Position numbers and translations under genes: made by a program. Below the pieces are notes generated by a model. That model was given only the letters and a program-made list of their open reading frames with translations, did no database searches and had not been told where the DNA came from. Of a DNA stretch of 64,000 bases, positions 677 through 45,010 are shown in pieces. The DNA lies in IMG/VR virus record IMGVR_UViG_3300041402_000314, positions 62,001 through 126,000 of that record. The stretch is one strand, 5' to 3'. Positions within the stretch are counted from its first letter, which is position 1. The number at the start of each line of letters is the position of its first letter.

Positions 677-1591
677 ATGGGAAGTTTTTATACTACTGAG
701 ATAAGTAAATATTCGCCTCTTTCGAGAGAAGAGGAGAAAGAAATAGCAATAAGATACAAAAAAGAAGGACATGATGTTGATGCCAATAAACTCATTACTA
801 GCAATCTTAGATATGTGGTAAGAGTAGCTAATAAACTTTCTGTACGTTATAGAGATGTTGATATATCGGAGTTGATTCAGGAAGGAAATATAGGTTTAAT
901 GAAAGCATTGGAAAAGTTCGAGCCTGAGAAAGGATTTAAACTCATTACATATGCTAATCAATGGATATTAACGTATATGAAAAGATTTATAGCTAAGAAT
1001 AATAATATTTGTTCCGCTACATTTGAGAATAACTATGAGCGGTTGTTTATGAAATCTCAAGGCAAAACAAAAGCTATTCACGATATTGATATTGGTACTT
1101 ATGAAGAGACGAATTTCAATGCTCTATATACTAATTGTACTGCTGAAGATAGATTAGCTGAAAAGAACTGGTTAAGATCAGTTCACGAAATAACAGATGA
1201 TGTCAATGAAAAATATAGTTTCGTTATTAAAAATCGATTGATAAGCGATGTTCCTTTGAAATTGGATGATATAGCGGAACATTTTAACATCAGTCGATCG
1301 GGCGCACATGATCTTGAGAAAAGAATAAAAGATAATCTGAAGAAGAGATTTATGGAGAGTCCAGACATAATGGAGTTTTTGGGTGAAGATACGATAAAAG
1401 TAAATGTTGAAATGGAAACGGTCAGAAGAAAGAAGAAAAAAATAGGCCATATTATTGACGAATTTGATTTTGACTTAGCAAAAGAACTACTCAAGAAAGA
1501 AACTTATAAAACGGTAGCTGAAAAAATGGGTATATCTAGGGGTTATCTACACACAATCATAAATCGTAAAGGTAAGGGAGCTGTGAAATGA
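677..1591 (+). CDS. Sigma-70 family sigma factor (RpoH/RpoD-like) with an extra C-terminal HTH
   Basis: Region 2 motifs LITSNLRYVV, ELIQEGNIGLMKALEKFEPEKGFKLITYAxxWI; region 4 LDDIAEHFNISR; second HTH YKTVAEKMGISRGYL. Confidence 0.9.
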   Translation: MGSFYTTEISKYSPLSREEEKEIAIRYKKEGHDVDANKLITSNLRYVVRVANKLSVRYRDVDISELIQEGNIGLMKALEKFEPEKGFKLITYANQWILTYMKRFIAKNNNICSATFENNYERLFMKSQGKTKAIHDIDIGTYEETNFNALYTNCTAEDRLAEKNWLRSVHEITDDVNEKYSFVIKNRLISDVPLKLDDIAEHFNISRSGAHDLEKRIKDNLKKRFMESPDIMEFLGEDTIKVNVEMETVRRKKKKIGHIIDEFDFDLAKELLKKETYKTVAEKMGISRGYLHTIINRKGKGAVK

Positions 1592-9509: not shown

Positions 9510-10103
9510 ATGCAAAATTTGAGAAAGAAAGTACCCAATCCATTAAGAATATATAATCTGTTCAACCAGATATACTATAGATATTTTTCCGATATCAATA
9601 TCAGAAGCGGGAAGCAGATCAAGAGCATAACCACTAAGGAATATTTAACTTTCTTTGTCGAGAATCATTATAAGAAGTTAAAGTCAATCGATAATATTAA
9701 ACATTATATTCTTTGGGCGTTTAAAGAAAAAGGTAAGTTTCCCATTAATCATCTTCATATCTATATTGATGAATGGTTGAAACATGAGTCTGATGATATC
9801 ATATATTTTGCTGATGCTATATCAGCATATCTCAGGAACAATGATCTTACTATCAAGGAGTATTTAGCACCTGTACCTAGATATTATCCACATATCATAC
9901 AGCATTATATAGGCCAGAAGAATATTCCGTTTGAATTTATTCTATATACTAAGGTCATTGATAGGATACCTAAGAAACAATTGACTTTATTAAAGGTGTT
10001 GTTGGGTGATGAGTTCTATGAGCTGGATATGTATAGGGAACGAATGAAGAAGAGAAAAGGATATTTAAGTGCCGAAGTAGAAAGACTTAAGAAATTGATT
10101 TAG
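9510..10103 (+). CDS. Probable gp59-like helicase loader
   Basis: About 200 aa, basic and aromatic; YPHIIQHY...IPFEFI resembles the gp59 C-domain; lies among replication genes. Confidence 0.5.
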   Translation: MQNLRKKVPNPLRIYNLFNQIYYRYFSDINIRSGKQIKSITTKEYLTFFVENHYKKLKSIDNIKHYILWAFKEKGKFPINHLHIYIDEWLKHESDDIIYFADAISAYLRNNDLTIKEYLAPVPRYYPHIIQHYIGQKNIPFEFILYTKVIDRIPKKQLTLLKVLLGDEFYELDMYRERMKKRKGYLSAEVERLKKLI

Positions 10104-11881: not shown

Positions 11882-12625
11882 ATGGAAAAAATAGAAGTAT
11901 CGAAGTTGAAAAATTTTACATTACCATTAAAGGCCATTAGGAATAATATACCATCGGTTATATTTTCTAAGAATGGAGACACATTTCATGTCAATGCAAA
12001 GACAGAAGATGGGTCAAAGCTAGTAAATCTCAGGTTTAATAATGATACTGTTAAACTCAAGAAGACAGGCGACATTAAAAAGCTTGGAATATACAATCTT
12101 GATGAGTTTATCAATATCCTTTCTATGTTTGATCAGGATGTGTTAGAAGTGACCAAAGACGATAACAGACTTCTGATCAAATTCAATGATAAATCAGAGG
12201 TTAGTTATGTACTCTCTGATATCAAGATCATAGAAGATAAGGAAGGACCTTCCGAGCCAAAGGCTAAGATTGACTTCTTCATCACATTTGAAATCAATAA
12301 AAATTTCTTCAAGAAAATCAAAAATATATCAAACACTGTTGATGGTAAGAACCTAAATCTTATCATGGAAGACGGTACATTATCCTATTCAATAGGTGAA
12401 GACTGTAAGCATACACATCACTATATAGAAGAGCTTCTAACTGATTGTGATAGCGAAGACTTTATTGTATCTCTACCTATCAAGACGGACGGTAAGGATA
12501 ATTTCGCATTTATATGTGACCAATTTCCTTACAAGGTGAGCGTACATTCTAAGATTGTACAGTTAGTAGCACAGACAGATGACTATGAATTATTGAGATA
12601 TTTCATAGCTCCGATAAAGAAATAA
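11882..12625 (+). CDS. T4 gp45-like sliding clamp
   Basis: GIYNLDEFINILSMF motif, C-terminal YFIA, position after the primase. Confidence 0.8.
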   Translation: MEKIEVSKLKNFTLPLKAIRNNIPSVIFSKNGDTFHVNAKTEDGSKLVNLRFNNDTVKLKKTGDIKKLGIYNLDEFINILSMFDQDVLEVTKDDNRLLIKFNDKSEVSYVLSDIKIIEDKEGPSEPKAKIDFFITFEINKNFFKKIKNISNTVDGKNLNLIMEDGTLSYSIGEDCKHTHHYIEELLTDCDSEDFIVSLPIKTDGKDNFAFICDQFPYKVSVHSKIVQLVAQTDDYELLRYFIAPIKK

Positions 12626-20863: not shown

Positions 20864-20893
20864 ATGTTAATTAAAAAGTTGAGGAGAACAACT

Positions 20894-22735
20894 ATGAATA
20901 CTGAAAGGATCGAAGAACTAGAAAGAGAAATAGAAAAACACAATCATTTATATTGGGAGAAAAATGAACCTATCATAAATGATGAAAGTTATGATGTATT
21001 ACTCCAAGAGCTACTGACAATATACCCAGATAGTCATATCTTCACTACCTTAGAGGAACAGAAATCTATCGAACCCCAAAATAAGTATGTACATTCAGAC
21101 CCTATGCTGTCCCTTGAGAAATTCTATAGCGTAAAAGAAGTCATTACATGGATGAAGAAGATAGGTAGATCACCCCACGAACTCTTCAAAATGGAACTCA
21201 AACTCGATGGTATTTCTGGTCGCCTAGAGAATGGTAATCTTGCGACTAGGGGAGATGGTCGAGTCGGTGAGAATCATACATCTAAAATTCCTTTCATAGA
21301 ATTCAAGGTAGCTTCAGATAAAACAATCTGTGAAACTGTTGATTGTACTATCAATGGTGAGATCATTATAACGGATAAGTTCTTTGAAGATAATCTTAAG
21401 GGAGAATTCAAGAATTCGAGAAATGCTGTTGCTGGTCTGATGGGTAGAAAGCGTCCTGAAGAGATCGAAGGAATGGGAGTTACTTTCGTTGATTTTGATT
21501 ATGATAAAATCCAACATACAGGAAATGTCGATGCCTTTGAAATCGGATGGGATGATCTGGTAAAAAATCTTACTTCAAAGGGATTTCCTTTTGATGGTAT
21601 CGTAATCAAATTGGCTGATACTGACTACTACAAGCTGTTGGGCAATAAAACCAAAAGTCCTAGAGGTGCTATAGCGTTTAAGTTCGCTAATAAGAAGGGA
21701 ATTACCCCTGCTACAGAGATTACAGCCCAAGTAAGTAGGAAGGGTAAGCTTACTCCTGTTGCCGAACTAGAGCCTATTGAGTTGGCTGGTGTTACGATAT
21801 CCAGAGCTACGTGTCATAATTTTAAGTTCGTTAAGGACATGGGCATAGGAAAAGGTTCTGTTGTTGTAATTGAAAGAGCAGGAGATGTGATACCAAAAAT
21901 CACGAGCGTTGTCAAAGGTAAAATTGATGATGTTATATTCCCAACAAATTGTCCCTGTTGTGACACACCAACTGAATTTAATGGTGTAGACCTATGTTGC
22001 CCTAACACTACATGCCCAGACCGTCTGATAGAGCATCTGGCTTTCATGGCTAAAACCATTGGTATCGATGAGCTTGGCAGACCGACTGCCGAGAAAATAT
22101 ATAATTATTATGTGGAATCCACTCATAATAAAACAAATATTTTTAGATTAAATTCCATATCATATGAAGATATTCTTTCTTTAGAAGGGTATGGTGAGAA
22201 GAGTGCTAAGACACTTTATGGTAATATCCAGAACGCATTGAAAAATATCAATGAAATAGATTTTTTGGCTTCTTTTGGTATATCTGGATGGGGTAAGACT
22301 ATGGCAGACAAAGCCCTTACCAAAGCTGGTAGCCTAGATAATCTTCTCAAAATGAATAAAGAAGAATTGACTTCTATTGAAGGAATCGGAGAAATAATGG
22401 CCGAAAATCTAATAAATGGCGTTAAAGAACAATGTATACGATTAGTTCATGCTGATTATACTACCTTCATTGTCGAACCTACCAAAGAACACAATAACAT
22501 AGTAGATGGACAACACGAAAACATAGTAAAGTATACAATCTGTTTCACTGGTAAATTAGAAAATCCGAGGAAATTCTATGAAAATATTGCTAAAGAAAGA
22601 GGGATGAAACCTACTTCTTCTGTAAATAAAGACTTGAACATATTGATTACTGCTGATAAGAACAGCGTATCCAGTAAAATGAAAAAAGCTGAAAAATTAG
22701 GTATAGAGATTTTATCTTTAGAGGAATGGCTATAA
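20894..22735 (+). CDS. ligA: NAD-dependent DNA ligase
   Basis: HNHLY...D..YD, PMLSLEK, KLDG, TRGDGRVGE, RNAVAG, DGIVIK, AIAFKF, RAGDVIP, Zn finger, HhH, BRCT. Confidence 0.96.
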   Translation: MNTERIEELEREIEKHNHLYWEKNEPIINDESYDVLLQELLTIYPDSHIFTTLEEQKSIEPQNKYVHSDPMLSLEKFYSVKEVITWMKKIGRSPHELFKMELKLDGISGRLENGNLATRGDGRVGENHTSKIPFIEFKVASDKTICETVDCTINGEIIITDKFFEDNLKGEFKNSRNAVAGLMGRKRPEEIEGMGVTFVDFDYDKIQHTGNVDAFEIGWDDLVKNLTSKGFPFDGIVIKLADTDYYKLLGNKTKSPRGAIAFKFANKKGITPATEITAQVSRKGKLTPVAELEPIELAGVTISRATCHNFKFVKDMGIGKGSVVVIERAGDVIPKITSVVKGKIDDVIFPTNCPCCDTPTEFNGVDLCCPNTTCPDRLIEHLAFMAKTIGIDELGRPTAEKIYNYYVESTHNKTNIFRLNSISYEDILSLEGYGEKSAKTLYGNIQNALKNINEIDFLASFGISGWGKTMADKALTKAGSLDNLLKMNKEELTSIEGIGEIMAENLINGVKEQCIRLVHADYTTFIVEPTKEHNNIVDGQHENIVKYTICFTGKLENPRKFYENIAKERGMKPTSSVNKDLNILITADKNSVSSKMKKAEKLGIEILSLEEWL

Positions 22736-35188: not shown

Positions 35189-35647
35189 ATGGAGCAGAAA
35201 TACGAAAGTCCTGATGTTAATATTAGGGAAAAAAGTGTTACGTATAAAGAATACAAGAATCCGTCTGTAGCTGTAGACATAATCATAATAAATGAAGATG
35301 GGAGAATAGTTCTGATCGAAAGAAAGAATCCGCCTTATGGTTGGGCATTACCCGGAGGATTTGTTGATTGTGGTGAAACACTTATGAATGCTGCTATCAG
35401 GGAAGCTAAAGAGGAAACATGTGTCGATGTTAAAATATTGGAAAGTTTGGGTGTATACGATGACCCTAAAAGAGACCCTAGACAACATGTAATTTCTGCT
35501 GTTTTCATAGCAACCGCTTTTAATCAGACACCAAAAGCTGCGGATGACGCAAAGAATCTTAAGATATATTCTTTAGATGATTTACCAGAATTGGCTTTCG
35601 ATCATACTAAAATTTTAGATGACTTTATGGGATGGGCTAAAAACTAA
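35189..35647 (+). CDS. Nudix hydrolase (ADP-ribose pyrophosphatase-like)
   Basis: [26 protein letters not shown] Nudix box; RDPR; LAFDH. Confidence 0.92.
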
Positions 35648-35879
35648 TGGATAAAGAAATTTATGGTAGATGGTTTTCAGTTTACCGATGTTCTGCCTGT
35701 AAGGAAAGATTGAGACGGAATGTAATGATGTATTCACATGGCTGCTGTCCTCATTGTGGTGTTAAATCAGGAGCCACCATAGTAGATTGTGATGAAGGCT
35801 CGGCAAGAAACATATATACAAAAAGGTCTTTTTGGTTTAAGAAATACAAAAGACATGAATGTAAATGGAGTGAGAAATA

Positions 35880-36302
35880 ATGAATTTGACGATACTTTTT
35901 ATAACACATTTTCTCTTTGACTTTATATTCCAGTCGAGGGAAATGGGTAAAAAGAAATCTGAAGATATCAATTTTCTTCTAAAGCATGGCGGTATCCTCT
36001 TCATGGGTTATATGTGGGCTGCATATGCCATATGTGATAACATAGCTGATATGTTTGCTATGAGTGCCGTAATCGTTCTCATTCATTGTATCCAAGATTG
36101 GTATATCTGGAGAGGTTATAAATGGCTGGCTAAGAGGCAAATAGCTAGAGAGAATTTTGATGGTGATATGAACAATACATGGATGGATGAAGAGCTGAAG
36201 ATATTCAAATATTGGGAAGACCATAAATTTTATGCTACTATAGGTCTCGACCAGACTCTTCATTTCATAACAATAGTTTTAATTTATAATTGGGTGATGT
36301 AA
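35880..36302 (+). CDS. DUF3307-like membrane protein
   Basis: HFLFDFIFQ..M...K, H, H..QD, GLDQTLH. Confidence 0.7.
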   Translation: MNLTILFITHFLFDFIFQSREMGKKKSEDINFLLKHGGILFMGYMWAAYAICDNIADMFAMSAVIVLIHCIQDWYIWRGYKWLAKRQIARENFDGDMNNTWMDEELKIFKYWEDHKFYATIGLDQTLHFITIVLIYNWVM

Positions 36303-36511
36303 AATGATACGAAAATATAATAAAGATTGTAAATGTTTTAAATGTGGTCATAATGATATATCAGATACTTTTCTAGTAAAAGGTAAATATTACTTCTTGT
36401 TAGATGGAAATTCGCGTAAATGGATTCCAGCCGAAGAAGAAATGATAGAACGCACCTGTCGTAATTGCGGATATCAATTTTATGAATTACCCTTAAATGA
36501 AGGTGGCTTAA

Positions 36512-37135
36512 ATGCTTAGAATAGGCTTGACTGGAAATATGGGTTCTGGGAAGGATACGGTAGCCCAAATACTCTCTAAAAAGAAAGGATTCATAGAATC
36601 CAATTCTGATGATATCTGTAGATGGTTATGGGAGAATGATGAGGATATTCAAATAGCGGTCTCTGCTCTTTTCTGTGGTGCTACTGATAGAGCAACCATA
36701 GCTAAATTGGCTTTCGATAATGAAAAAAAGAGAAAGAAATTAGAACAGATTTTTCATCCCAGAGTCGATGGATTACATGCTTGTGATTTTTACATGCATT
36801 ATGATACCGAAGATTTCTTGATCGTCAATTCTCCTCTTCTTATAGAGACTGGTTATTATGAGAAGATGGATTTTGTAGTGGTTGTTGGTGCTGATAGAGA
36901 GACCTGTATCGAGCGAGTTCTGGAACGAAATAAGAATCTAAGTCGAGAAGACATAGAGAAAAGATTGGATATCCAGATGCCTTTAGAAAATATGTTTCCA
37001 TATGCTGATTATGTTGTGGAAAATTGCGGAACTAAAAAAGAGCTTGACAATGAAGTTGAAAAGTTGTATAATAGGCTTCTTGAACTTAAATCTTATGAGG
37101 TGACTAGCAGTGAAAGTAGCAATATATCCGGGTAG
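36512..37135 (+). CDS. coaE: Dephospho-CoA kinase
   Basis: IGLTGNMGSGKDT, DRA.IA...F, LEQIFHP, PLLIE, RL..QMP, AD.V.EN. Confidence 0.88.
   Translation: MLRIGLTGNMGSGKDTVAQILSKKKGFIESNSDDICRWLWENDEDIQIAVSALFCGATDRATIAKLAFDNEKKRKKLEQIFHPRVDGLHACDFYMHYDTEDFLIVNSPLLIETGYYEKMDFVVVVGADRETCIERVLERNKNLSREDIEKRLDIQMPLENMFPYADYVVENCGTKKELDNEVEKLYNRLLELKSYEVTSSESSNISG
37044..37072 (+). promoter_or_regulatory. Consensus sigma70 promoter inside the coaE 3' end
   Basis: TTGACA-N17-TATAAT with extended TG, ~40 nt before the coaD start. Confidence 0.7.
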
Positions 37136-37595
37136 TTTTAATCCCTTTCATAGAGGACATGTCGATGTAGTTAGACAAGCCTTAAAGCTATTCGATAAAG
37201 TGATCATAGCTAAAGGCTGTAATCCAGATAAGAATGAATACGTATTGCCTATATTAACCTTCTCCGATGAATTTGTTGGAAAAGAATTACATGGAATTAA
37301 AGATTTCTATGGAAAGGACTCTATGGAAGTGGATAAGTTTACTGGATTATTTACTGACTACATCGAGGAATTCAAAGACGGTATAAAATCTGAGGAATTA
37401 GATGTCCAATTAGCCGTCATCAAAGGTCTCAGGAACGGTCAAGACCTTGAATATGAGAAGAATCAACAATATTGGAATGAAGATTTGGGTATAGAGATTC
37501 CTTTCTTCTATATAATATCTGATAGAAAATATTGTCATATATCCAGTTCTGCTATAAGAGGATTGGAGAAATTTAAGGAGAATAAAGATGGGTGA
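37110..37595 (+). CDS. coaD: Phosphopantetheine adenylyltransferase
   Basis: AIYPGSFNPFHRGH, NPDK, KGLR...D.EYE, ISSSAIR. Confidence 0.88.
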   Translation: MKVAIYPGSFNPFHRGHVDVVRQALKLFDKVIIAKGCNPDKNEYVLPILTFSDEFVGKELHGIKDFYGKDSMEVDKFTGLFTDYIEEFKDGIKSEELDVQLAVIKGLRNGQDLEYEKNQQYWNEDLGIEIPFFYIISDRKYCHISSSAIRGLEKFKENKDG

Positions 37596-37713: not shown

Positions 37714-38163
37714 ATGTTTGGAAAAAATGATAAGAAGTTGATGGAAGAAAATGAAGGACTGGTAACGGCTAATGAGAAGCTTGCAAAGGACATCGATAAG
37801 ATCAAGAAGGAACTGAGTAAGGAAAAGGTTTCCCTAACTGATACTATCGACAGCCTGAGTAATGAGAAGAGGAGACTTAAGGAAGAAGTTGCAGACCTTA
37901 AGCTCCAGAAGAAGATTGAAAATGAAGACCTCAAGCACATGATCAAGATCAAGGAAGAGAAAGCTGAGATCGTTATGGAGAAGAAACAGCTTGAGATGCA
38001 GAGGGAGAGTGATAAAGCTATCCAGACGATCAGAGATGAGTACCAGAAGAAGACTGAATTGAGCCTTGAAGATCAAATCAAAAAGATGGGCGAGACTACC
38101 GATAAGATTATGGCTCTTGTACCTAACATCGGTGTTAAGCTTAAGGGCGACATCACCAAGTAA
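37714..38163 (+). CDS. Coiled-coil protein
   Basis: K/E-rich heptads; GGAGG RBS. Confidence 0.7.
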   Translation: MFGKNDKKLMEENEGLVTANEKLAKDIDKIKKELSKEKVSLTDTIDSLSNEKRRLKEEVADLKLQKKIENEDLKHMIKIKEEKAEIVMEKKQLEMQRESDKAIQTIRDEYQKKTELSLEDQIKKMGETTDKIMALVPNIGVKLKGDITK

Positions 38164-38369
38164 TGGGATTGCCTTTTTATCCTCAAATTATATGGCCTAA
38201 TCCAAGCGGATTGTCACCTATATCTTCTGGCGGATGTTATACTATGGAAACTAACGAAACTGGTTCTGGTTTTGGATGTGGAAGTACGTCTATCAAAGTT
38301 AGAGAAGAGCTGACAATCCGCGAGGAGCTACAAATGGATGTTGATATTTGGCTCGGAGATGTGGTATAA
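38163..38369 (+). CDS. Hypothetical protein with C-terminal LQxxxDxWL motif
   Basis: ...ELTIREELQMDVDIWLGDVV. Confidence 0.65.
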   Translation: MGLPFYPQIIWPNPSGLSPISSGGCYTMETNETGSGFGCGSTSIKVREELTIREELQMDVDIWLGDVV

Positions 38370-38875
38370 TGGGTGAAATTTTTCATGGTGGTTGTCTTGG
38401 TTGTACCAATCAGGAGTTTTATGACTTAGTGGAATGTGTTGATTGTATGTATTATAAATTCGATGCATTCAGCACTAAACCTAATAATTATAAATCTGAA
38501 AAGCTAACAAAAGAGTATGACCCTGTTACTGATAGTTATTATGCTCTGAAACCTGATGAGAAGATCGTCCATTATCAAGAGAACTATGAACTTGATGAAA
38601 ATGGTAGAGCATTTCAACCAATGCATACTAGGATAGTCAAAAAAAATAATGCGCTTAATACTGTTTGGGATTCTAGGGATGAAAAGTTACCATCATATGA
38701 GGTCGATCATATGGATATAACCCATATGGGTCAAAAATTTCGCATTGCTGGTCATAGAACGGAAGTCCCTGATTATAGCGGTTCTGTTGCTGAATGGGTA
38801 GAACCGCCCAAGGAATTTGGGCTAGTGGATGAACTACAGAAAGAGACCGATGAATGGTTGGTAGGAGTGGTATAG
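38369..38875 (+). CDS. Hypothetical protein with C-terminal LQxExDxWL motif
   Basis: ...EFGLVDELQKETDEWLVGVV; N-terminal CxxC pairs. Confidence 0.7.
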   Translation: MGEIFHGGCLGCTNQEFYDLVECVDCMYYKFDAFSTKPNNYKSEKLTKEYDPVTDSYYALKPDEKIVHYQENYELDENGRAFQPMHTRIVKKNNALNTVWDSRDEKLPSYEVDHMDITHMGQKFRIAGHRTEVPDYSGSVAEWVEPPKEFGLVDELQKETDEWLVGVV

Positions 38876-39217
38876 ATGAGAAATAGTTTAGATCATTTGC
38901 CTAAATATAACCCCAAGGGTACTGTCTTTGATATCGAGTCTAAAGATTTTAGAGATTCCGCTAGTGATTATGAGAAAATGGCCAGGGATGATATTAATCG
39001 AGGTATGGGTTTGCCTGTTGATATGGTAGATATGAGAGAAAAAATTCTCTCTAGTCTTAGCATTTCAGATAGGATAGCACTTATGCATGGTGATAGTATA
39101 GCAGGAACCTTATTAGGGGTTCCTGTTAATCTCCATAATTATCCTAATATCGGATTTACTAAAGAGCTGACTCTAAGGGAAACCTTACAGGAGGAAATAG
39201 ATAAATGGCTATGTTAA
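38876..39217 (+). CDS. Hypothetical protein with C-terminal LQxExDxWL motif
   Basis: ...ELTLRETLQEEIDKWLC. Confidence 0.7.
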   Translation: MRNSLDHLPKYNPKGTVFDIESKDFRDSASDYEKMARDDINRGMGLPVDMVDMREKILSSLSISDRIALMHGDSIAGTLLGVPVNLHNYPNIGFTKELTLRETLQEEIDKWLC

Positions 39218-39645
39218 GTTGTGTCAAGTCTGATGTATTATTAAATGCTATTGGTCAAGAACTTGATGTTAGATATGGGAAAGGAGAAACATATAAAGAT
39301 TTTGACCCTATTAATTATAGAGAGACATATACTCACATAACGGAAGATCATATTAAGAGAACTTTCGAGTTAGATAGATTTGTTATGGAGAGAAATTTAC
39401 GTGGGAATGAATGGTCGAATTCGTTGCGTTTAATTGAGGAAGATCATAGCCATCATTGTCCTGAGATGAGTCCTAAGAAGCAACCAAGGCATGTAATTAA
39501 ACAAGGATTTGAACCCATATATGATTGGGAGTTACCGAAATCAACTAAACCAAAGAAGAAAAGTAAGCTGATAGGTAATATCAGAGAACGTTTACAAAAA
39601 GAAACCGATAACTGGTTAAAATCAGTCCAGAAAGAAGAGGACTAA
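39205..39645 (+). CDS. Hypothetical protein with C-terminal LQxExDxWL motif
   Basis: ...NIRERLQKETDNWLKSV. Confidence 0.7.
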   Translation: MAMLSCVKSDVLLNAIGQELDVRYGKGETYKDFDPINYRETYTHITEDHIKRTFELDRFVMERNLRGNEWSNSLRLIEEDHSHHCPEMSPKKQPRHVIKQGFEPIYDWELPKSTKPKKKSKLIGNIRERLQKETDNWLKSVQKEED

Positions 39646-39854
39646 ATACTTGGGAGGAATAACAGCATATGAGATTCATTAAAATTTTAGAAAGAACTCC
39701 TAGATGTGATGAAAGAGTAGATGATAGAATTAACCAATTGCGTGATATTAGTATGTTGGCTGATAAGGTAGGATGTTCGAAAGCTGCTGAGTTCATTAGG
39801 AAAATATCGGCAGGTAAATCGCATTATAAAATTAAAGAAAAGTAAAGAGGATAT

Positions 39855-40586
39855 ATGTTAGGAGAAATTAGGTTAAAATATTTCTTGGATGGTATTGGAA
39901 ATTATAGGGATTGTAGTGATCTTCTTTACACTATTGATTCTAGTACAGATACCCGATATTTTAAAGAAGGGCAGGTAATAGAGATAGACCATGCTTTTTT
40001 TAAAGTAAGGGCTATTGAATTAGCTTATATTCCTCTGCCTTGGGAAGGGAAAGGCGAGAAACCTAATAGGGATAAGCCTATAAAAATAATTTACGTCACA
40101 TCCTGTAAAGTAGTTATGATGGGTGATAAGCGTAAGAAAGAAATTGTCGCCATTAATACGATTCCTAAACTGAAGGATTTACCTGAATTCGATATCTCAG
40201 AGATAGTGGATGATACCGATTACACTCAGGAAGACTTCAAGGATGATTTCGCGTATCTTGAATCAGAAGAAGCTAAAAAGAAGAAAAAGAAAGAAGCGAA
40301 GATAATAGCTAAAGCTGATCTAGCTAAACTGAAAAGTCTCAAGAAGAGAAAGAAGTTATCTACTCCTAAAGAGGAGAAACCTGTTAAAAATCTCAGACGT
40401 AAGATCAGGACTACTGATGTGATGGATATGTTTGGTGGAAATGATACTGAGAAGCCTGAGAATGCTCCTGAGTCCACAAAGAAGGCAAAGGATAAGCCAG
40501 TGTCTAAGAATACTAGAAAGAAGCGTTGTAAGGGCTGTGGTGATCTTTTCAATGACTTAGATAAACATATATGTAAGGGGAAATAA
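39855..40586 (+). CDS. Hypothetical protein with Lys-rich linker and C-terminal zinc knuckle
   Basis: CKGC...HIC at the C-terminus. Confidence 0.6.
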   Translation: MLGEIRLKYFLDGIGNYRDCSDLLYTIDSSTDTRYFKEGQVIEIDHAFFKVRAIELAYIPLPWEGKGEKPNRDKPIKIIYVTSCKVVMMGDKRKKEIVAINTIPKLKDLPEFDISEIVDDTDYTQEDFKDDFAYLESEEAKKKKKKEAKIIAKADLAKLKSLKKRKKLSTPKEEKPVKNLRRKIRTTDVMDMFGGNDTEKPENAPESTKKAKDKPVSKNTRKKRCKGCGDLFNDLDKHICKGK

Positions 40587-42013
40587 TTATGGATGCCATA
40601 TATGAATTATATACAGGAGATTATATCGATCTTTCAAATCTAGTTCTTGTCAGTAAAATATATTTTTATGATAGTAGTTTAGGCCGTGAACCAGAGAAAG
40701 AATCGTGGGGGCGTGTAGTTTTTAGATGCAAGTTTAGACTTTTAAAAGATACTGTTGATATCGGTGATAATAAGAATGTCACTGGTGAAAAAGAGATCGA
40801 AGAGAAAAAGAAATTTGTTGAACGCGAACGACAAGAGTTAATCAGCGCATGGAATTTATATAGAAAGTCGGAGAGAGAATAAATGAAAAAGGATGAACTA
40901 GGAAAAAGAATACTTGAAATCCCAGAAGATGGTGAATTTTGGAATAGTGGCTGCGGTGACTCTTTCTATGATGTCGGTAAGATACTTTTGGAAAAGGGAT
41001 TCAGTATGGATGAGACTATAGATATGCTCGAAACTCTTTATTTTGCTACTGCCTCTGAATTTGGGTCTTAATATGACAGACGCTATTTGTGATGTTAAAA
41101 AATGCCAGAAAGAATTGGACGAGAAAGGAGCATTATTATTCAGTCCTCCAGCTAAATCTATTAATCGGGTATTCGGTCTGGGTGGTGAAATAGACGTGAC
41201 TCGAAAATTCCATATCTGTAAAGAATGCTATTACGATATAATTCATAATTATATGGAGGATTAACTTGAAAATAAAAGAAGGTGTGGAAGTTTCAACCAG
41301 TGAATTTTGGTATGATATGAGTGAAGGATATTTATCGCCTCAAGAAATATTAGAAGACAAAAACGATATTGAAAAGGTATATCGGGCGATTAATACCCTC
41401 AAGGTTTTTAAGCAGTCATGTGAGGAACAAATAGAAGGTTTTATTCAATAGGAGAAGTAATGGATATAACAATTGATGCCGATAACGTTGAAGTTAATAG
41501 TGGTTACTTTGGTGGGAAAAATCTCAGAGTAGATTTACGCGAGGTCGTTGCTAGTGATATATTAGAAAGTTTATTTGAGGACTTTCATGATTATGATATA
41601 GTGGGTCTAATTCTTGAACAAATATCTTTAAATGACTTTACTGATGCCTTGGAGGAGAATGACCGAGAAGAATTATATAGAAAATTGAAGGGGGAAATCG
41701 AATAATATTACCGTTCGGGAAATATTCGATATAAATACTTATAAAAAGGAAATGAGTATCTTATATGGAATTAAACCCAACAACAGATTTAATAAACGCC
41801 CTTGAGGGTGAGCTAGTCCACATAAAGACTTTCGATGAATATGAAATGATTGACCGTTATAACATCAAAGAAGCTGGTACACTATATATGCTGAATAATA
41901 GATGTTCGGTGGAAGCAACTAATATATCATCTATTCAATGGATTAATGATCATAAAGACCCTGATAAAGATAAGACTTATTATGGCCTGAAAGAATCGAC
42001 TAAGGAACATTAA

Positions 42014-42517
42014 ATGAAAAGCAGTTTACAGAAAGAAATAGATGAGTGGTTAGGGCAAGAGGATAGTACCATACCAGAACCAACGAGTCCAGCATTACAA
42101 TCATCATTCTTTGATATGGTGGATAATATGATAAAGCTTAACAGGCAACATAGGATGAATTTACCTATGAATGTACCTACTTCAATTAGTCCTGTTCAAT
42201 TTGCTATGGAATTTTGTACTGTTAAATGTGATATAGGTAGACGAACAGGAAAGACGGGATATGTTAAATATAAAGCAGATGAAAATTCCTTTATAATTGT
42301 TCCAGAACATCAATTAGTGAGATCATATCCTAAAAATCTTATAGTTAAATGCGTCCGAGATATAATCCATTTTCCTAATATATTTCATGGTAAGAAAGCT
42401 CAAACCATCTATATAGATGAACCACAAATGGTTTTTAGATCAATTCCGCAACCTGATTTATATTATAGATTAGTGGATGAAATGTATGACCAAACCTTTA
42501 TATTGTTGGGAGCTTGA
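42014..42517 (+). CDS. Small P-loop (terminase-ATPase-like) protein with N-terminal LQxExDxWL motif
   Basis: MKSSLQKEIDEWL; GRRTGKT; IYIDEP. Confidence 0.6.
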   Translation: MKSSLQKEIDEWLGQEDSTIPEPTSPALQSSFFDMVDNMIKLNRQHRMNLPMNVPTSISPVQFAMEFCTVKCDIGRRTGKTGYVKYKADENSFIIVPEHQLVRSYPKNLIVKCVRDIIHFPNIFHGKKAQTIYIDEPQMVFRSIPQPDLYYRLVDEMYDQTFILLGA

Positions 42518-43898: not shown

Positions 43899-44396
43899 TT
43901 AACGCCTCGGTTTCTTCTTCTTATTATATATCTCGATCTCAGTCAAAATTTTCCATTCCCATCCTCTTTTAACACAATAAGCTTTAGCCGCCTCCCATTT
44001 TGCAGAGTTAACAGCATACGTATAAGTCTCCCTTAATAACGTTTGAGTCCTCTTACCCCTTCTTCTAACAGGTGGTAAGGACTGAGCATATGGTTTCACC
44101 TCGATCAAATATTTCGACAATCTCCCCTGAGTATCCCTTATAATAGCGAAAAAATCTGGAAAATATCTAGCTGGTTTAGTCTGAACCACCTTGTCCTTAT
44201 TGAATTTTATCGGCTTATGATAGCCTATAATAATGGATTCTGAATTCCATTCCACCACATTTGGATTAGCATCAAAATACCTCATCACTTTTAATTCCCA
44301 CGAACTACGATACACAATAGGCCACGCACCTTTATATTTTGAAGGGTGTTTCGGTATATACGTTCCCTGACTATATTTAGATTTTCCTCTAGGCAT
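43899..44396 (-). CDS. gp4-like head completion nuclease (TnsA-like)
   Basis: YIPKHPSKYKG, YRSSWE, WNSE, RYFPDF, LIEVKP, VNSAKWEAA. Confidence 0.93.
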   Translation of the reverse strand: MPRGKSKYSQGTYIPKHPSKYKGAWPIVYRSSWELKVMRYFDANPNVVEWNSESIIIGYHKPIKFNKDKVVQTKPARYFPDFFAIIRDTQGRLSKYLIEVKPYAQSLPPVRRRGKRTQTLLRETYTYAVNSAKWEAAKAYCVKRGWEWKILTEIEIYNKKKKPRR

Positions 44397-44423
44397 AAGT
44401 AACCATCCATTTTTTTATAGTAG

Positions 44424-44443
44424 TATAAATATTTATATAAATA
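44424..44443. promoter_or_regulatory. Overlapping divergent T4-type late promoters
   Basis: TATAAATA 44424, TATTTATA 44430, TATAAATA 44436 between the divergent gp4 and gp2 genes. Confidence 0.8.
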
Positions 44444-44455
44444 ATTATAAAGAGG

Positions 44456-45010
44456 ATGAGTACGTATATGCCTTTCACAAGAAAATATAAGAAATTTGCT
44501 ACTGGCGGCTTCGCCCAATTTAGTTATAGCCCTAAGTGGCTCTCAAAATTATCCTTCTATGACAGAAGACCCCTTATCATTTTTATGGCTTACGATAACC
44601 AACGTAAATTGATACATGGAATAAATCTTCATTGGCTTACTAAAGAACAAAGAAGAAGAACCATCGCTTTAGTTAAAAGTGCTATGCGTATAACGAAAGA
44701 TAAGGGCTGGCCTTTTTCTAAGCCTATGCCTCTTGATATCTATCGTCTACTCAAAAGTAAATATCCTATTGCGACCATAGCATATAGAACATACTTCCCT
44801 AACCGTATAAGAAACGTATCCTTTCCTGCATGGGAGTGGGGAAACGAGGATGTGGAAGAGAAGATCATCAATACAGATACCGAGAAGATTATTGGTGTTT
44901 CTCCAGAACAAATTCAAGCACTCGCAAAAAAAGCATTGGGAGCTAGAGGACAGACCCAGACGAGAAAGGCTAAGAGAAGATCAAAAAGGTATAAATCAAA
45001 AAGTAGATAG
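44456..45010 (+). CDS. gp2-like DNA end protector
   Basis: FSYSPK...L.FYDRRPLI, GINLHWL...R, YRTY. Confidence 0.8.
   Translation: MSTYMPFTRKYKKFATGGFAQFSYSPKWLSKLSFYDRRPLIIFMAYDNQRKLIHGINLHWLTKEQRRRTIALVKSAMRITKDKGWPFSKPMPLDIYRLLKSKYPIATIAYRTYFPNRIRNVSFPAWEWGNEDVEEKIINTDTEKIIGVSPEQIQALAKKALGARGQTQTRKAKRRSKRYKSKSR

What the first reader, a model, noticed from the sequence alone, without database searches (positions are those of the whole stretch)
38163..42517. Five unrelated proteins share a terminal LQxExDxWL peptide
Seen: four consecutive genes end in IREELQMDVDIWL, LVDELQKETDEWL, LRETLQEEIDKWL and IRERLQKETDNWL. A fifth (42014, a P-loop protein) begins with SSLQKEIDEWL. The rest of each protein looks unrelated to the others. 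Inference: a portable amphipathic docking helix or tag that recruits different cargo domains to one partner (for example the upstream coiled-coil protein 37714, a host hub or a protease), or a hetero-oligomerisation module. I do not recognise it as a described motif.
Basis: partly seen in the sequence, partly recalled or inferred. Interest (0 to 1): 0.72.

Follow-up and report, generated by a model that had tools for sequence, protein, structure and literature searches.

The report
Shared docking helix on phage proteins
Five otherwise unrelated proteins of an uncultured T4-like phage carry the same short helix at one end. In every other phage examined, that helix marks the small protein encoded right after one particular coiled-coil gene, so it is probably a transferable tag that attaches different proteins to that coiled-coil scaffold, though binding has not been shown.

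Summary
LQx[ED]xDxWL occurs exactly five times in the six-frame translation of the 204-kb genome, all within window 38328-42052. Four copies are C-terminal (A-D) and one is N-terminal (E); shuffles give about zero. Synonymous sites vary, so the conservation is in the peptide, not the DNA. Outside a 13-18 residue helix the five proteins are not homologous. In each family's orthologs the motif is the best-conserved part (E: 0.93 identity against 0.36 for the linker). A paralog of E in this genome and its distant homologs lack the motif and linker.

New here: the motif is the signature of a widespread, unannotated two-gene phage module. A 112-165 aa coiled-coil protein (window 37714-38163) is followed, usually with overlapping stop and start codons, by a small low-complexity protein ending in about KELTIREELQKETDEWL. 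This held in 38 of 38 loci that could be assessed, including lambdoid-like and P22-like contigs. In this T4-like lineage the helix has also been added to B, C, D and E.

Best reading: a portable docking helix for the coiled-coil hub. Binding is inferred, not shown, and the biological role is unknown. A sliding-clamp (PIP-like) reading is unlikely, because a complete 40.9-kb phage with the module shows no match to the gp45 clamp family.

The parts
37714..38163 (+). Coiled-coil protein (149 aa), the proposed hub. Conserved patches are LK..KK..EEDIKHMVK..EE (residues 62-82), IA..KD.YRDK.E..L (103-118) and MY..IL.RLP (128-137).
   Evidence: AF2 with a 19-sequence alignment gives one helix over residues 2-135 (pLDDT 89, pTM 0.41), which suggests an oligomeric coiled coil. 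Homologs in 38 assessable loci are always followed by a motif gene. No significant family match in Pfam, PHROGs, NCBIfam or PADLOC.
38163..38369 (+). Protein A (68 aa): a Gly/Ser/Thr-rich, low-complexity N-terminal part followed by the C-terminal motif helix (core 38328-38354). It is the ancestral partner in the two-gene module. Its start overlaps the hub gene's stop (TAATG).
   Evidence: Orthologs are in L001, L003 and L022, and A-like proteins occur in many other phages. Motif identity is 0.69 against 0.37 for the rest.
38369..38875 (+). Protein B (168 aa): N-terminal Cys-rich zinc-ribbon-like part, a conserved middle domain, and the C-terminal motif (core 38834-38860). Its start overlaps A's stop (TAATG).
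   Evidence: The L003 ortholog keeps the motif but lacks the zinc-ribbon part. B is absent from L001 and L022.
38876..39217 (+). Protein C (113 aa) with the C-terminal motif (core 39185-39211). The conserved tail is NLHNYPNIGFQKELTLRETLQKEIDKWL.
   Evidence: In 13 orthologs the tail is the best-conserved part. Motif identity is 0.81-0.86 against 0.60 for the rest.
39205..39645 (+). Protein D (146 aa) with the motif (core 39592-39618) 8 residues from its C-terminus. Its start codon lies inside C's Lys-Trp codons (AAATGG).
   Evidence: Motif identity is 0.72 against 0.35 for the rest. hhalign against B and C aligns only the motif.
42014..42517 (+). Protein E (167 aa): N-terminal motif (core 42026-42052, residues 5-13), a disordered hypervariable linker (residues 14-26), and a small RecA-like P-loop domain (Walker A GRRTGKT).
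   Evidence: Sixteen orthologs keep M[KR]xxLQ[KR]EIDEWLG, and eight more distant homologs lack it. AF2 gives a helix at 4-13, pLDDT below 50 for 14-26, and a folded domain. Foldseek hits are generic P-loop/RecA-like folds. A paralog in the same genome aligns only from residue 26.
41730..41737 (+). T4-type late-promoter-like TATAAATA, 35 nt upstream of ORF 41765-42013, whose stop directly abuts E's start.
   Evidence: The same octamer precedes the gp2-like, portal, scaffold and major-capsid genes. There is none between 34422 and 41730.
37044..37072 (+). Perfect sigma-70 consensus promoter-like site (TTGACA, 17-nt spacer, TATAAT) upstream of the run CoaD-like gene, hub, A, B, C, D.
   Evidence: This is a consensus match only; no function has been shown.

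Best explanation
The shared peptide is an amphipathic, acidic helix of about 18 residues. Its consensus is K-[KR]-E-L-[TS]-[IFL]-R-E-E-L-Q-K-E-[TIV]-D-E-W-L, with hydrophobic residues at -4, 0, +4, +7, +8 and +11.

I propose that it works as a portable docking element for the coiled-coil protein encoded by ORF 37714-38163. The ancestral unit is a two-gene module found in many unrelated phages: the coiled-coil protein, followed by a small low-complexity protein that ends in this helix. The two genes usually have overlapping stop and start codons.

In this T4-like lineage the helix has also been added to four other proteins. B, C and D are chained directly behind A. E is a small P-loop NTPase that carries the helix at its N-terminus on a flexible linker. 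The coiled coil would therefore act as a scaffold that gathers several different client proteins, or lets them compete for one site.

Shown here: the motif exists, the constraint is on the peptide, the motif is modular, and it is always linked to the coiled-coil gene.

Inferred: physical binding, the site on the hub (perhaps the invariant Lys/His/Tyr patches), and the stoichiometry.

Unknown: the biological process. In several small phages the module lies among recombination or replication genes, but contexts are mixed.
For: (1) Five exact copies in the genome against about zero expected, with synonymous-site variation.

(2) The motif is the most conserved segment in every family. Pairwise identities are E 0.93 against linker 0.36 and domain 0.68, C 0.81 against 0.60, D 0.72 against 0.35, and A 0.69 against 0.37.

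(3) The motif is modular. Distant E homologs and a paralog in this genome lack the motif and linker. AF2 models E as helix, disordered linker, then folded domain. The motif is N-terminal in E and in L010, and tandem in L007, L010 and P0026.

(4) A motif profile searched against 1.84 billion proteins gave 32 hits at E<=1e-3. Thirty are short proteins with the motif at a terminus, and many come from other phages.

(5) Three such proteins on long contigs each sit directly after a homolog of 37714.

(6) In the reverse direction, all 38 assessable loci found with the coiled-coil profile have the motif in the next gene, mostly with a 1- or 4-nt overlap.

(7) In the window the genes for the hub, A, B, C and D overlap or abut.

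(8) The hub is modelled as a 134-residue single helix. Its invariant K66, K67, K74, H75, Y110 and K113 could complement the acidic, Trp-bearing motif.

(9) Two clades show changes on both sides. Motif LQ to LR goes with hub EEDIKHM to E[KR]EI.[HQ]L. Motif WLK to WLA goes with hub LPN to LPK.
Against: There is no direct evidence of contact.

- Conserved adjacency and overlapping genes show a functional link, not necessarily binding through this helix.
- E lies 2.4 kb from the hub gene, behind a late-promoter-like site. A-D follow an early-type promoter-like site, so all clients may not be present at the same time.
- The two co-changes each come from a single clade and can be explained by shared ancestry. 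A mutual-information scan over 36 pairs gave no usable signal.
- No family, structure or paper gives a function for either partner.
Confidence: 0.5

Rival explanations
1. The helix docks onto a third party, such as a conserved host protein or another phage protein. The coiled-coil protein works in the same pathway without being the receptor.
For: Adjacency shows only a functional link. The invariant polar residues Q, E and D plus W-L resemble peptide-in-pocket motifs. The module sits among early genes in several small phages, where host-directed functions are common.
Against: The module occurs in very different phage types (204-kb T4-like, 40-48 kb lambdoid-like and P22-like), so hosts are probably diverse. 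A co-inherited phage partner is therefore the simpler explanation. The one partner always present is the coiled-coil gene. No host is known.
Confidence: 0.2
2. The helices bind one another, so that A-E form hetero-oligomeric bundles. The motif would then be an oligomerisation module rather than a tag for a separate hub.
For: The hydrophobic spacing is that of an amphipathic helix. Tandem copies within one protein (L007, L010, P0026) could form hairpins.
Against: Most phages with the module have only one motif protein. The complete genome G002 has exactly one motif site, so hetero-oligomers among clients cannot be the ancestral role. The invariant Q, E and D are unusual for a simple bundle core.
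Confidence: 0.12
3. It is a PIP-box-like or T4-type sliding-clamp-binding epitope that tethers these proteins to the phage gp45 clamp.
For: The pattern Q-x-x-[I/V/T]-x-x-W-L fits the PIP-box form Qxxhxxaa (my own knowledge of that consensus). The motif is terminal and sits on a variable linker, as described for T4 gp55 (PMC2988020). This phage's own polymerase ends ...NMEEFF. The phage has a gp45-like clamp at window 11882-12622.
Against: A complete 40.9-kb phage with terminal repeats (G002, locus L016) carries the module but gives no match to the gp45 family. The same family search does find the clamp in this genome. The conserved part extends about 9 residues further upstream as a regular helix. 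The motif tracks the coiled-coil gene, not clamp genes. T4's own epitopes read SLDFL[FY].
Confidence: 0.05
4. It is a capsid-targeting, protease-recognition or degradation tag, by analogy with the T4 internal-protein targeting sequence or C-terminal degrons.
For: The cluster lies just upstream of the head genes (gp4-like, gp2-like, portal, prohead protease, scaffold, major capsid). E has a late-promoter-like site. Several copies have [IL]-x-E just before LQ, which resembles the T4 prohead-protease site (own knowledge).
Against: A-D have no late-promoter-like site. The motif is C-terminal in most proteins, N-terminal in some and internal in tandem copies, which does not fit a terminal degron. 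In small phages the module usually sits among early genes rather than head genes. The [IL]-x-E feature is not universal.
Confidence: 0.05
5. The repeat is a nucleic-acid element at gene junctions (promoter, coupling signal or recombination site), and the peptide is only a by-product.
For: The copies lie at gene junctions. A promoter-like site (11 of 12 matches plus TG) overlaps the first copy at 38341-38370. The end of window B is identical in protein sequence to the end of A in L022, which hints at spread by recombination.
Against: Synonymous positions differ freely among copies while the amino acids are kept. Across 53 distinct instances from many phages, it is the protein consensus that is conserved.
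Confidence: 0.02

Closest known systems
T4-type sliding-clamp-binding epitopes (C-termini of gp43, gp55 and gp33)
   Same: Both are short hydrophobic-plus-acidic peptides at a terminus, shared by unrelated proteins, transferable between them, and joined to the body by a linker of variable length and sequence (PMC2988020; T4 tails read from L006).
   Different: The sequence differs (SLDFL[FY] in T4). The motif here is a longer regular helix. It tracks a coiled-coil gene, not the clamp. It occurs in a complete phage genome with no match to the gp45 family.
PIP box of PCNA-binding proteins (Qxxhxxaa)
   Same: The spacing Q-x-x-aliphatic-x-x-aromatic-hydrophobic is shared, as are the terminal position and flexible tether (comparison from my own knowledge of the consensus).
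   Different: The residues L(0), E(+3) and D(+5) are invariant here but are not part of the PIP box. The upstream helix is also conserved. There is no link to clamp genes. Binding was not tested.
T4 capsid targeting sequence of the internal proteins
   Same: Both are short shared terminal peptides that would direct several unrelated phage proteins to one assembly. The gene cluster lies near the head genes.
   Different: The T4 sequence is N-terminal, found on late proteins, and removed by the prohead protease (own knowledge). Here the motif is mostly C-terminal, on genes without late-promoter-like sites, and occurs in phages of other morphotypes.
Acidic C-terminal tip of bacterial SSB on a Gly/Gln-rich disordered linker
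   Same: A-like proteins resemble a free-standing disordered Gly/Gln/Ala-rich linker ending in an acidic-hydrophobic peptide.
   Different: The motif is not at the very C-terminus (1-11 further residues follow it) and can be N-terminal. The sequences are unrelated. There is no OB fold.

Membership tests
T4-type clamp-binding epitope / PIP box | Short hydrophobic and acidic peptide at a protein terminus, on a variable linker | tested here: met
   Terminal in all five proteins. The linker of E is hypervariable and modelled as disordered.
T4-type clamp-binding epitope / PIP box | Sequence matches the clamp-binding tail of the phage's own polymerase | tested here: inconclusive
   The polymerase ends ...NMEEFF and the motif core reads [ITV]-D-x-W-L. 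Only a loose pattern (hydrophobic, acidic, any, aromatic, hydrophobic) is shared.
T4-type clamp-binding epitope / PIP box | Occurs together with a gp45-type clamp in the same genome | tested here: not met
   The complete 40.9-kb phage G002 has the module but no phrog_223 match. The same search finds the clamp in this genome.
T4-type clamp-binding epitope / PIP box | Physical binding to the clamp | not tested
   My single complex-prediction job went to the coiled-coil hypothesis instead.
T4 capsid targeting sequence | N-terminal position on late-expressed proteins, with a prohead-protease site | tested here: not met
   Four of five copies are C-terminal. Only E has a late-promoter-like site. 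[IL]-x-E is not universal.
C-terminal degron or SSB-tip-like peptide | The motif must end at the free C-terminus | tested here: not met
   One to eleven residues follow the motif. There are also N-terminal and internal tandem copies.
Spanin pair (Rz/Rz1), considered for the coiled-coil plus small-protein module | N-terminal transmembrane helix in the coiled-coil protein, and a lipobox Cys in the small protein | tested here: not met
   No hydrophobic 19-residue stretch in any hub or A-like protein. Many A-like proteins have no Cys at all.
Coiled-coil plus motif-protein module (defined here) | Homolog of 37714 directly followed by a gene carrying L[QR]xE[TIV][DN]xWL at a terminus | tested here: met
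   Window 37714-38163 followed by 38163-38369. The same holds in 38 of 38 assessable loci.

The most novel reading that the evidence does not exclude
A widespread, previously unrecognised phage scaffold-and-client system. A long coiled-coil protein and its disordered Gly/Gln-rich partner would form a scaffold, possibly a higher-order or condensate-like assembly linked to recombination or replication. Phages would plug new enzymes into it simply by adding an 18-residue docking helix, as this T4-like lineage has done four times, once with a RecA-like P-loop NTPase.
Probability: 0.3. Interest if true: 0.8.

Novelty: new variant of a known kind. Interest (0 to 1): 0.62.

Why it matters
Short docking peptides shared by unrelated proteins are how T4 ties its replication and late-transcription proteins to the sliding clamp. 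Few such systems are known in phages.

This finding offers a second, independent example. It has a clear sequence signature, a specific candidate receptor, and a natural experiment in which the tag has been moved onto new proteins. It also links two groups of 'hypothetical' phage proteins, found in uncultured T4-like, lambdoid-like and P22-like phages, into one module that can be tested with peptides and a single Trp-to-Ala change.

If binding is confirmed, the helix and hub could serve as a compact recruitment pair. The client list (B, C, D and the P-loop protein E) would point to the process the module serves.

Tried and rejected
**Complex prediction.** The coiled-coil protein (two copies) with protein A returned 'no answer' (score 0.02, mark 0.32). 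No controls were run. This is no evidence either way.

**Family libraries.** Pfam, PHROGs, NCBIfam and PADLOC gave nothing significant for the hub, A-D, or A-like proteins. There were only weak coiled-coil noise hits. E matched two PHROGs of unknown function.

**GenBank phages.** BLASTN of the region and TBLASTN of two hub proteins found no match.

**Bacterial genomes.** One hit in 185,579 species genomes, on a contig of a metagenome-assembled genome.

**ESM Atlas.** Only unnamed viral or bacterial clusters and generic long-helix look-alikes.

**Text search.** Motif strings searched in papers gave nothing relevant.

**Foldseek of E against the PDB.** Only generic RecA-like or helicase-domain hits, TM-score 0.35-0.46.

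**Covariation.** Mutual information between hub columns and motif positions over 36 pairs was dominated by lineage effects and was not usable.

**DNA-repeat idea.** Rejected on synonymous variation.

**Clamp idea.** Rejected as the general explanation. An earlier search of this genome with PF02916 was uninformative because the model matched nothing anywhere.

**False positives.** Two long hits of the motif profile (P0025, P0029) are repeat-rich surface proteins without the Trp.

**Look-alike tails.**
- The ligase tail ...LSLEEWL most likely belongs to the last helix of its BRCT domain (own knowledge), so I did not count it.
- The CQKELDEKG segment in ORF 41073-41264 is part of a conserved Cys-rich domain, not the motif.
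Full report
**Setting.** The window is bases 62001-126000 of a 204,149-bp viral record with 35% G+C (the G+C value is). CheckV estimates it as 89% complete. It is a distant T4-like phage.
- Its portal is 35-38% identical to those of Methylophilales, Pelagibacter and Synechococcus T4-like phages.
- Syntenic relatives carry gp4-like, gp2-like, portal, prohead protease, scaffold and gp23 genes just downstream of the region of interest.
- The replisome genes are present: primase, a clamp of family phrog_223 at 11882-12622, gp44, gp62, regA and gp32.
- There is also a gp55 homolog.

**The observation.** The ORF list and a six-frame regular-expression scan confirm the five peptides at the stated places. 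Across the whole genome LQx[ED]xDxWL occurs five times and nowhere else. Fifty shuffles gave no strict match and 0.06 relaxed matches per genome. Aligning the coding DNA shows different codons for the same residues (Leu CTA/TTA/CTC/TTG, Gln CAA/CAG). Selection therefore acts on the peptide, not on a DNA or RNA element.

**Are the proteins otherwise unrelated?** All-against-all BLASTP aligns only 13-22 residues around the motif. The one longer alignment, between B and D (31 bits), is anchored on the motif. Profile-profile comparison of the family alignments (D with B, C with D) aligns 16-18 motif residues and nothing else. C against E finds nothing. So they are not full-length homologs.

**Conservation in orthologs.**
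- A search with E found 15 orthologs at 51-61% identity and one at 42%. All begin M[KR]xxLQ[KR]EIDEWLG, followed by a Pro-rich linker that varies in length and sequence. Eight more distant homologs of 130-148 aa start directly with the P-loop domain.
- Syntenic contigs L001 (204.7 kb), L003 (76.9 kb) and L022 carry orthologs of A, C, D and E. L003 also has B. Each has the motif at the same end.
- C has 13 orthologs, and its tail is the best-conserved part.
- Mean pairwise identity inside and outside the motif is: E 0.93 against linker 0.36 and domain 0.68; C 0.81 against 0.60; D 0.72 against 0.35; A 0.69 against 0.37.
- AF2 models E as a short helix (residues 4-13), a disordered stretch (14-26, pLDDT below 50) and a confident RecA-like P-loop domain. 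Foldseek gives only generic P-loop relatives.
- A paralog of E elsewhere in this genome (183993-184430, 33% identity) aligns from residue 26 of E onward, so it lacks the motif and linker.

Together these results show a modular, selectively maintained terminal peptide.

**Beyond this lineage.** I built a 28-position profile from 16 motif segments and ran it against 1.84 billion representative proteins. It gave 32 hits at E<=1e-3.
- Two are long, repeat-rich surface proteins that lack the Trp. These are false positives.
- The other 30 are proteins of 48-168 aa with the motif at a terminus.
- Many are not relatives of A-E. They are 65-105 aa proteins with a Gly/Ala/Gln/Met-rich, low-complexity N-terminal part, ending in about KELSFREELQKETDEWLK. 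Two of them carry the helix twice.
- Over 53 distinct instances, the consensus is K-[KR]-E-L-[TS]-[IFL]-R-E-E-L-Q-K-E-[TIV]-D-E-W-L-[KG]-x-V. L(0) is invariant, and Q(+1), W(+7) and L(+8) are nearly so (50, 52 and 52 of 53). The hydrophobic residues are spaced as in an amphipathic helix.

**The key result.** Three of these proteins lie on long contigs. L007 has NinB, NinG and Q-like genes. L008 has RecT and an M15 peptidase. L009 has a P22-type tailspike domain. In each, the motif gene starts on the stop codon of a 121-130 aa gene. The products of those upstream genes are clear homologs of window ORF 37714-38163, sharing LKEEVxDLKLKKKxxEEDIKHMVKxKEE ... ILERLPN.

I then searched in the opposite direction, using the coiled-coil alignment as the query.
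- Viral contigs gave 12 loci (one the same phage as L008).
- Metagenome contigs gave 26 loci.
- One representative genome per species for 185,579 species gave 1 locus.

In every locus where the downstream gene could be read, that gene carries the motif. Counting the window and its relatives, this is 38 of 38 loci. The motif is C-terminal in nearly all and an N-terminal tandem pair in L010. Two loci have lost the Trp (L021 ...DTSL and L031 ...DKRL). L044 keeps the Trp but has Arg where the conserved Asp usually lies. Most pairs overlap by 1 or 4 nt. Five further loci could not be assessed because the contig ends. L013 has a second motif protein 600 nt further on, so the tag has also spread in another lineage.

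In the window the genes for the hub, A, B, C and D form an unbroken chain: TAATG, TAATG, TAGATG, then an overlap in which D's ATG lies inside C's Lys-Trp codons.

**The hub.** AF2 with 19 homologs models the 37714 protein as one helix spanning residues 2-135 (pLDDT 89, pTM 0.41). This suggests an oligomeric coiled coil. Its most conserved positions are polar: K66, E82, K113 and P137 are invariant, and K67, K74, H75 and Y110 are at 97%. Polar invariance is unusual for a purely structural coiled coil. These basic and aromatic residues could complement the acidic, Trp-bearing helix, but that is inference.

Two clades show changes on both sides. Motif LQ to LR goes with hub EEDIKHM to E[KR]EI.[HQ]L. 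Motif WLK to WLA goes with hub LPN to LPK. Each is a single evolutionary event, so the support is weak.

**Expression.** The octamer TATAAATA precedes the structural genes. It also occurs 35 nt upstream of ORF 41765, which abuts E. There is no copy between 34422 and 41730. A perfect sigma-70 consensus lies at 37044-37072, upstream of the run from the CoaD-like gene to D. A-D may therefore be early or middle genes and E late. These are consensus matches only.

**The clamp alternative.** The motif fits the PIP-box spacing and resembles the T4 arrangement: hydrophobic, acidic C-terminal epitopes on gp43, gp55 and gp33, with a hypervariable linker in gp55. The T4 tails read from the T4 record are ...SLDFLFG and ...SLDFLYEAND. 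This phage's polymerase ends ...NMEEFF.

However, the motif follows the coiled-coil gene across phage types. A complete 40.9-kb genome with terminal repeats (G002) carries the module but gives no match to the gp45 family, while the same search finds the clamp in this genome. I rate the clamp reading at about 5%.

**What the module does.** This remains unknown.
- The hub and A-D, and their relatives in other phages, have no significant match in Pfam, PHROGs, NCBIfam or PADLOC; E matches only two PHROGs of unknown function.
- The region and the hub proteins gave no match in GenBank phages.
- The Atlas search returned no named cluster that looks related.
- No paper mentions the motif strings.
- In the small phages the neighbours are mixed. 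They often include recombination or replication genes (RecT, exonuclease, RuvC-like, FEN-like, methylases). In a few loci the neighbours are an endolysin, small membrane proteins or capsid genes.
- Neither partner has a transmembrane segment or a lipobox, so they are not spanins.

**Verdict.** Binding is inferred from gene linkage and modularity only. The one complex prediction available gave no answer, which counts neither for nor against. The specific motif, the hub family and their strict pairing appear to be undescribed.

Noticed in passing
genome 57659-60214 (upstream of the window) and window 20864-22735: The DNA polymerase ends ...DVTNMEEFF and the NAD-dependent ligase ends ...ILSLEEWL. 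Both tails are acidic then aromatic. The polymerase tail is a likely clamp epitope. The ligase tail probably belongs to the last helix of its BRCT domain.
   Followed up: partly
window 677-1588; genome 53037-53465 (-): The phage encodes a full-length sigma-70-family protein (regions 1.2, 2 and 4) as well as a gp55-type late sigma homolog.
   Followed up: no
window 35189-37595: There is a run of cofactor-metabolism genes: NUDIX hydrolase, DUF3307, a dephospho-CoA kinase (CoaE)-like gene and a cytidylyltransferase-like (CoaD- or NMNAT-like) gene. The run is conserved in L001, L003 and L022.
   Followed up: no
L022:11907-13730: In one relative the prohead protease gene encodes 607 aa, with weak or faint intein and LAGLIDADG matches. 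This suggests an intein inside the protease.
   Followed up: no
L004:3034-4182 and L022:7950-8885 compared with window 43899-44456: A GIY-YIG/NUMOD3 homing-endonuclease gene lies next to the gp4-like gene in two relatives but is absent at that position in the window.
   Followed up: no
window 39855-40586: A 243-aa protein has a very strongly conserved N-terminal domain across relatives, a Lys-rich tail and, in most copies, a terminal CxxC...HxC knuckle. It could be a nucleic-acid-binding partner of the cluster.
   Followed up: no
window 38341-38370: A promoter-like site (TTGATA, 18-nt spacer, TATAAT, with an upstream TG) overlaps the DNA encoding A's motif. The start of B lies at the -10 element, so it is probably a chance match.
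   Followed up: no
L022:1290-1739: The coiled-coil gene of this relative has an in-frame stop (...EKLA*DIDK...). This could be a sequencing error or a broken copy. A, C, D and E are intact there.
   Followed up: no
window 38369-38470 compared with L003:6097-6483: The Cys-rich N-terminal part of B is present in the window but missing in the L003 ortholog. B as a whole is absent from L001 and L022. The tail of window B (LQKETDEWLVGVV) is identical to the tail of A in L022, which hints that B acquired its tag from A.
   Followed up: partly
window 9510-10103: A 197-aa ORF contains an internal ...HIYIDEWLKHE... segment that resembles the motif core but lacks the Leu-Gln. Its conservation was not checked.
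   Followed up: no
genome 183993-184430: A motif-less paralog of E (33% identity) lies among glycosyltransferase-like genes.
   Followed up: partly
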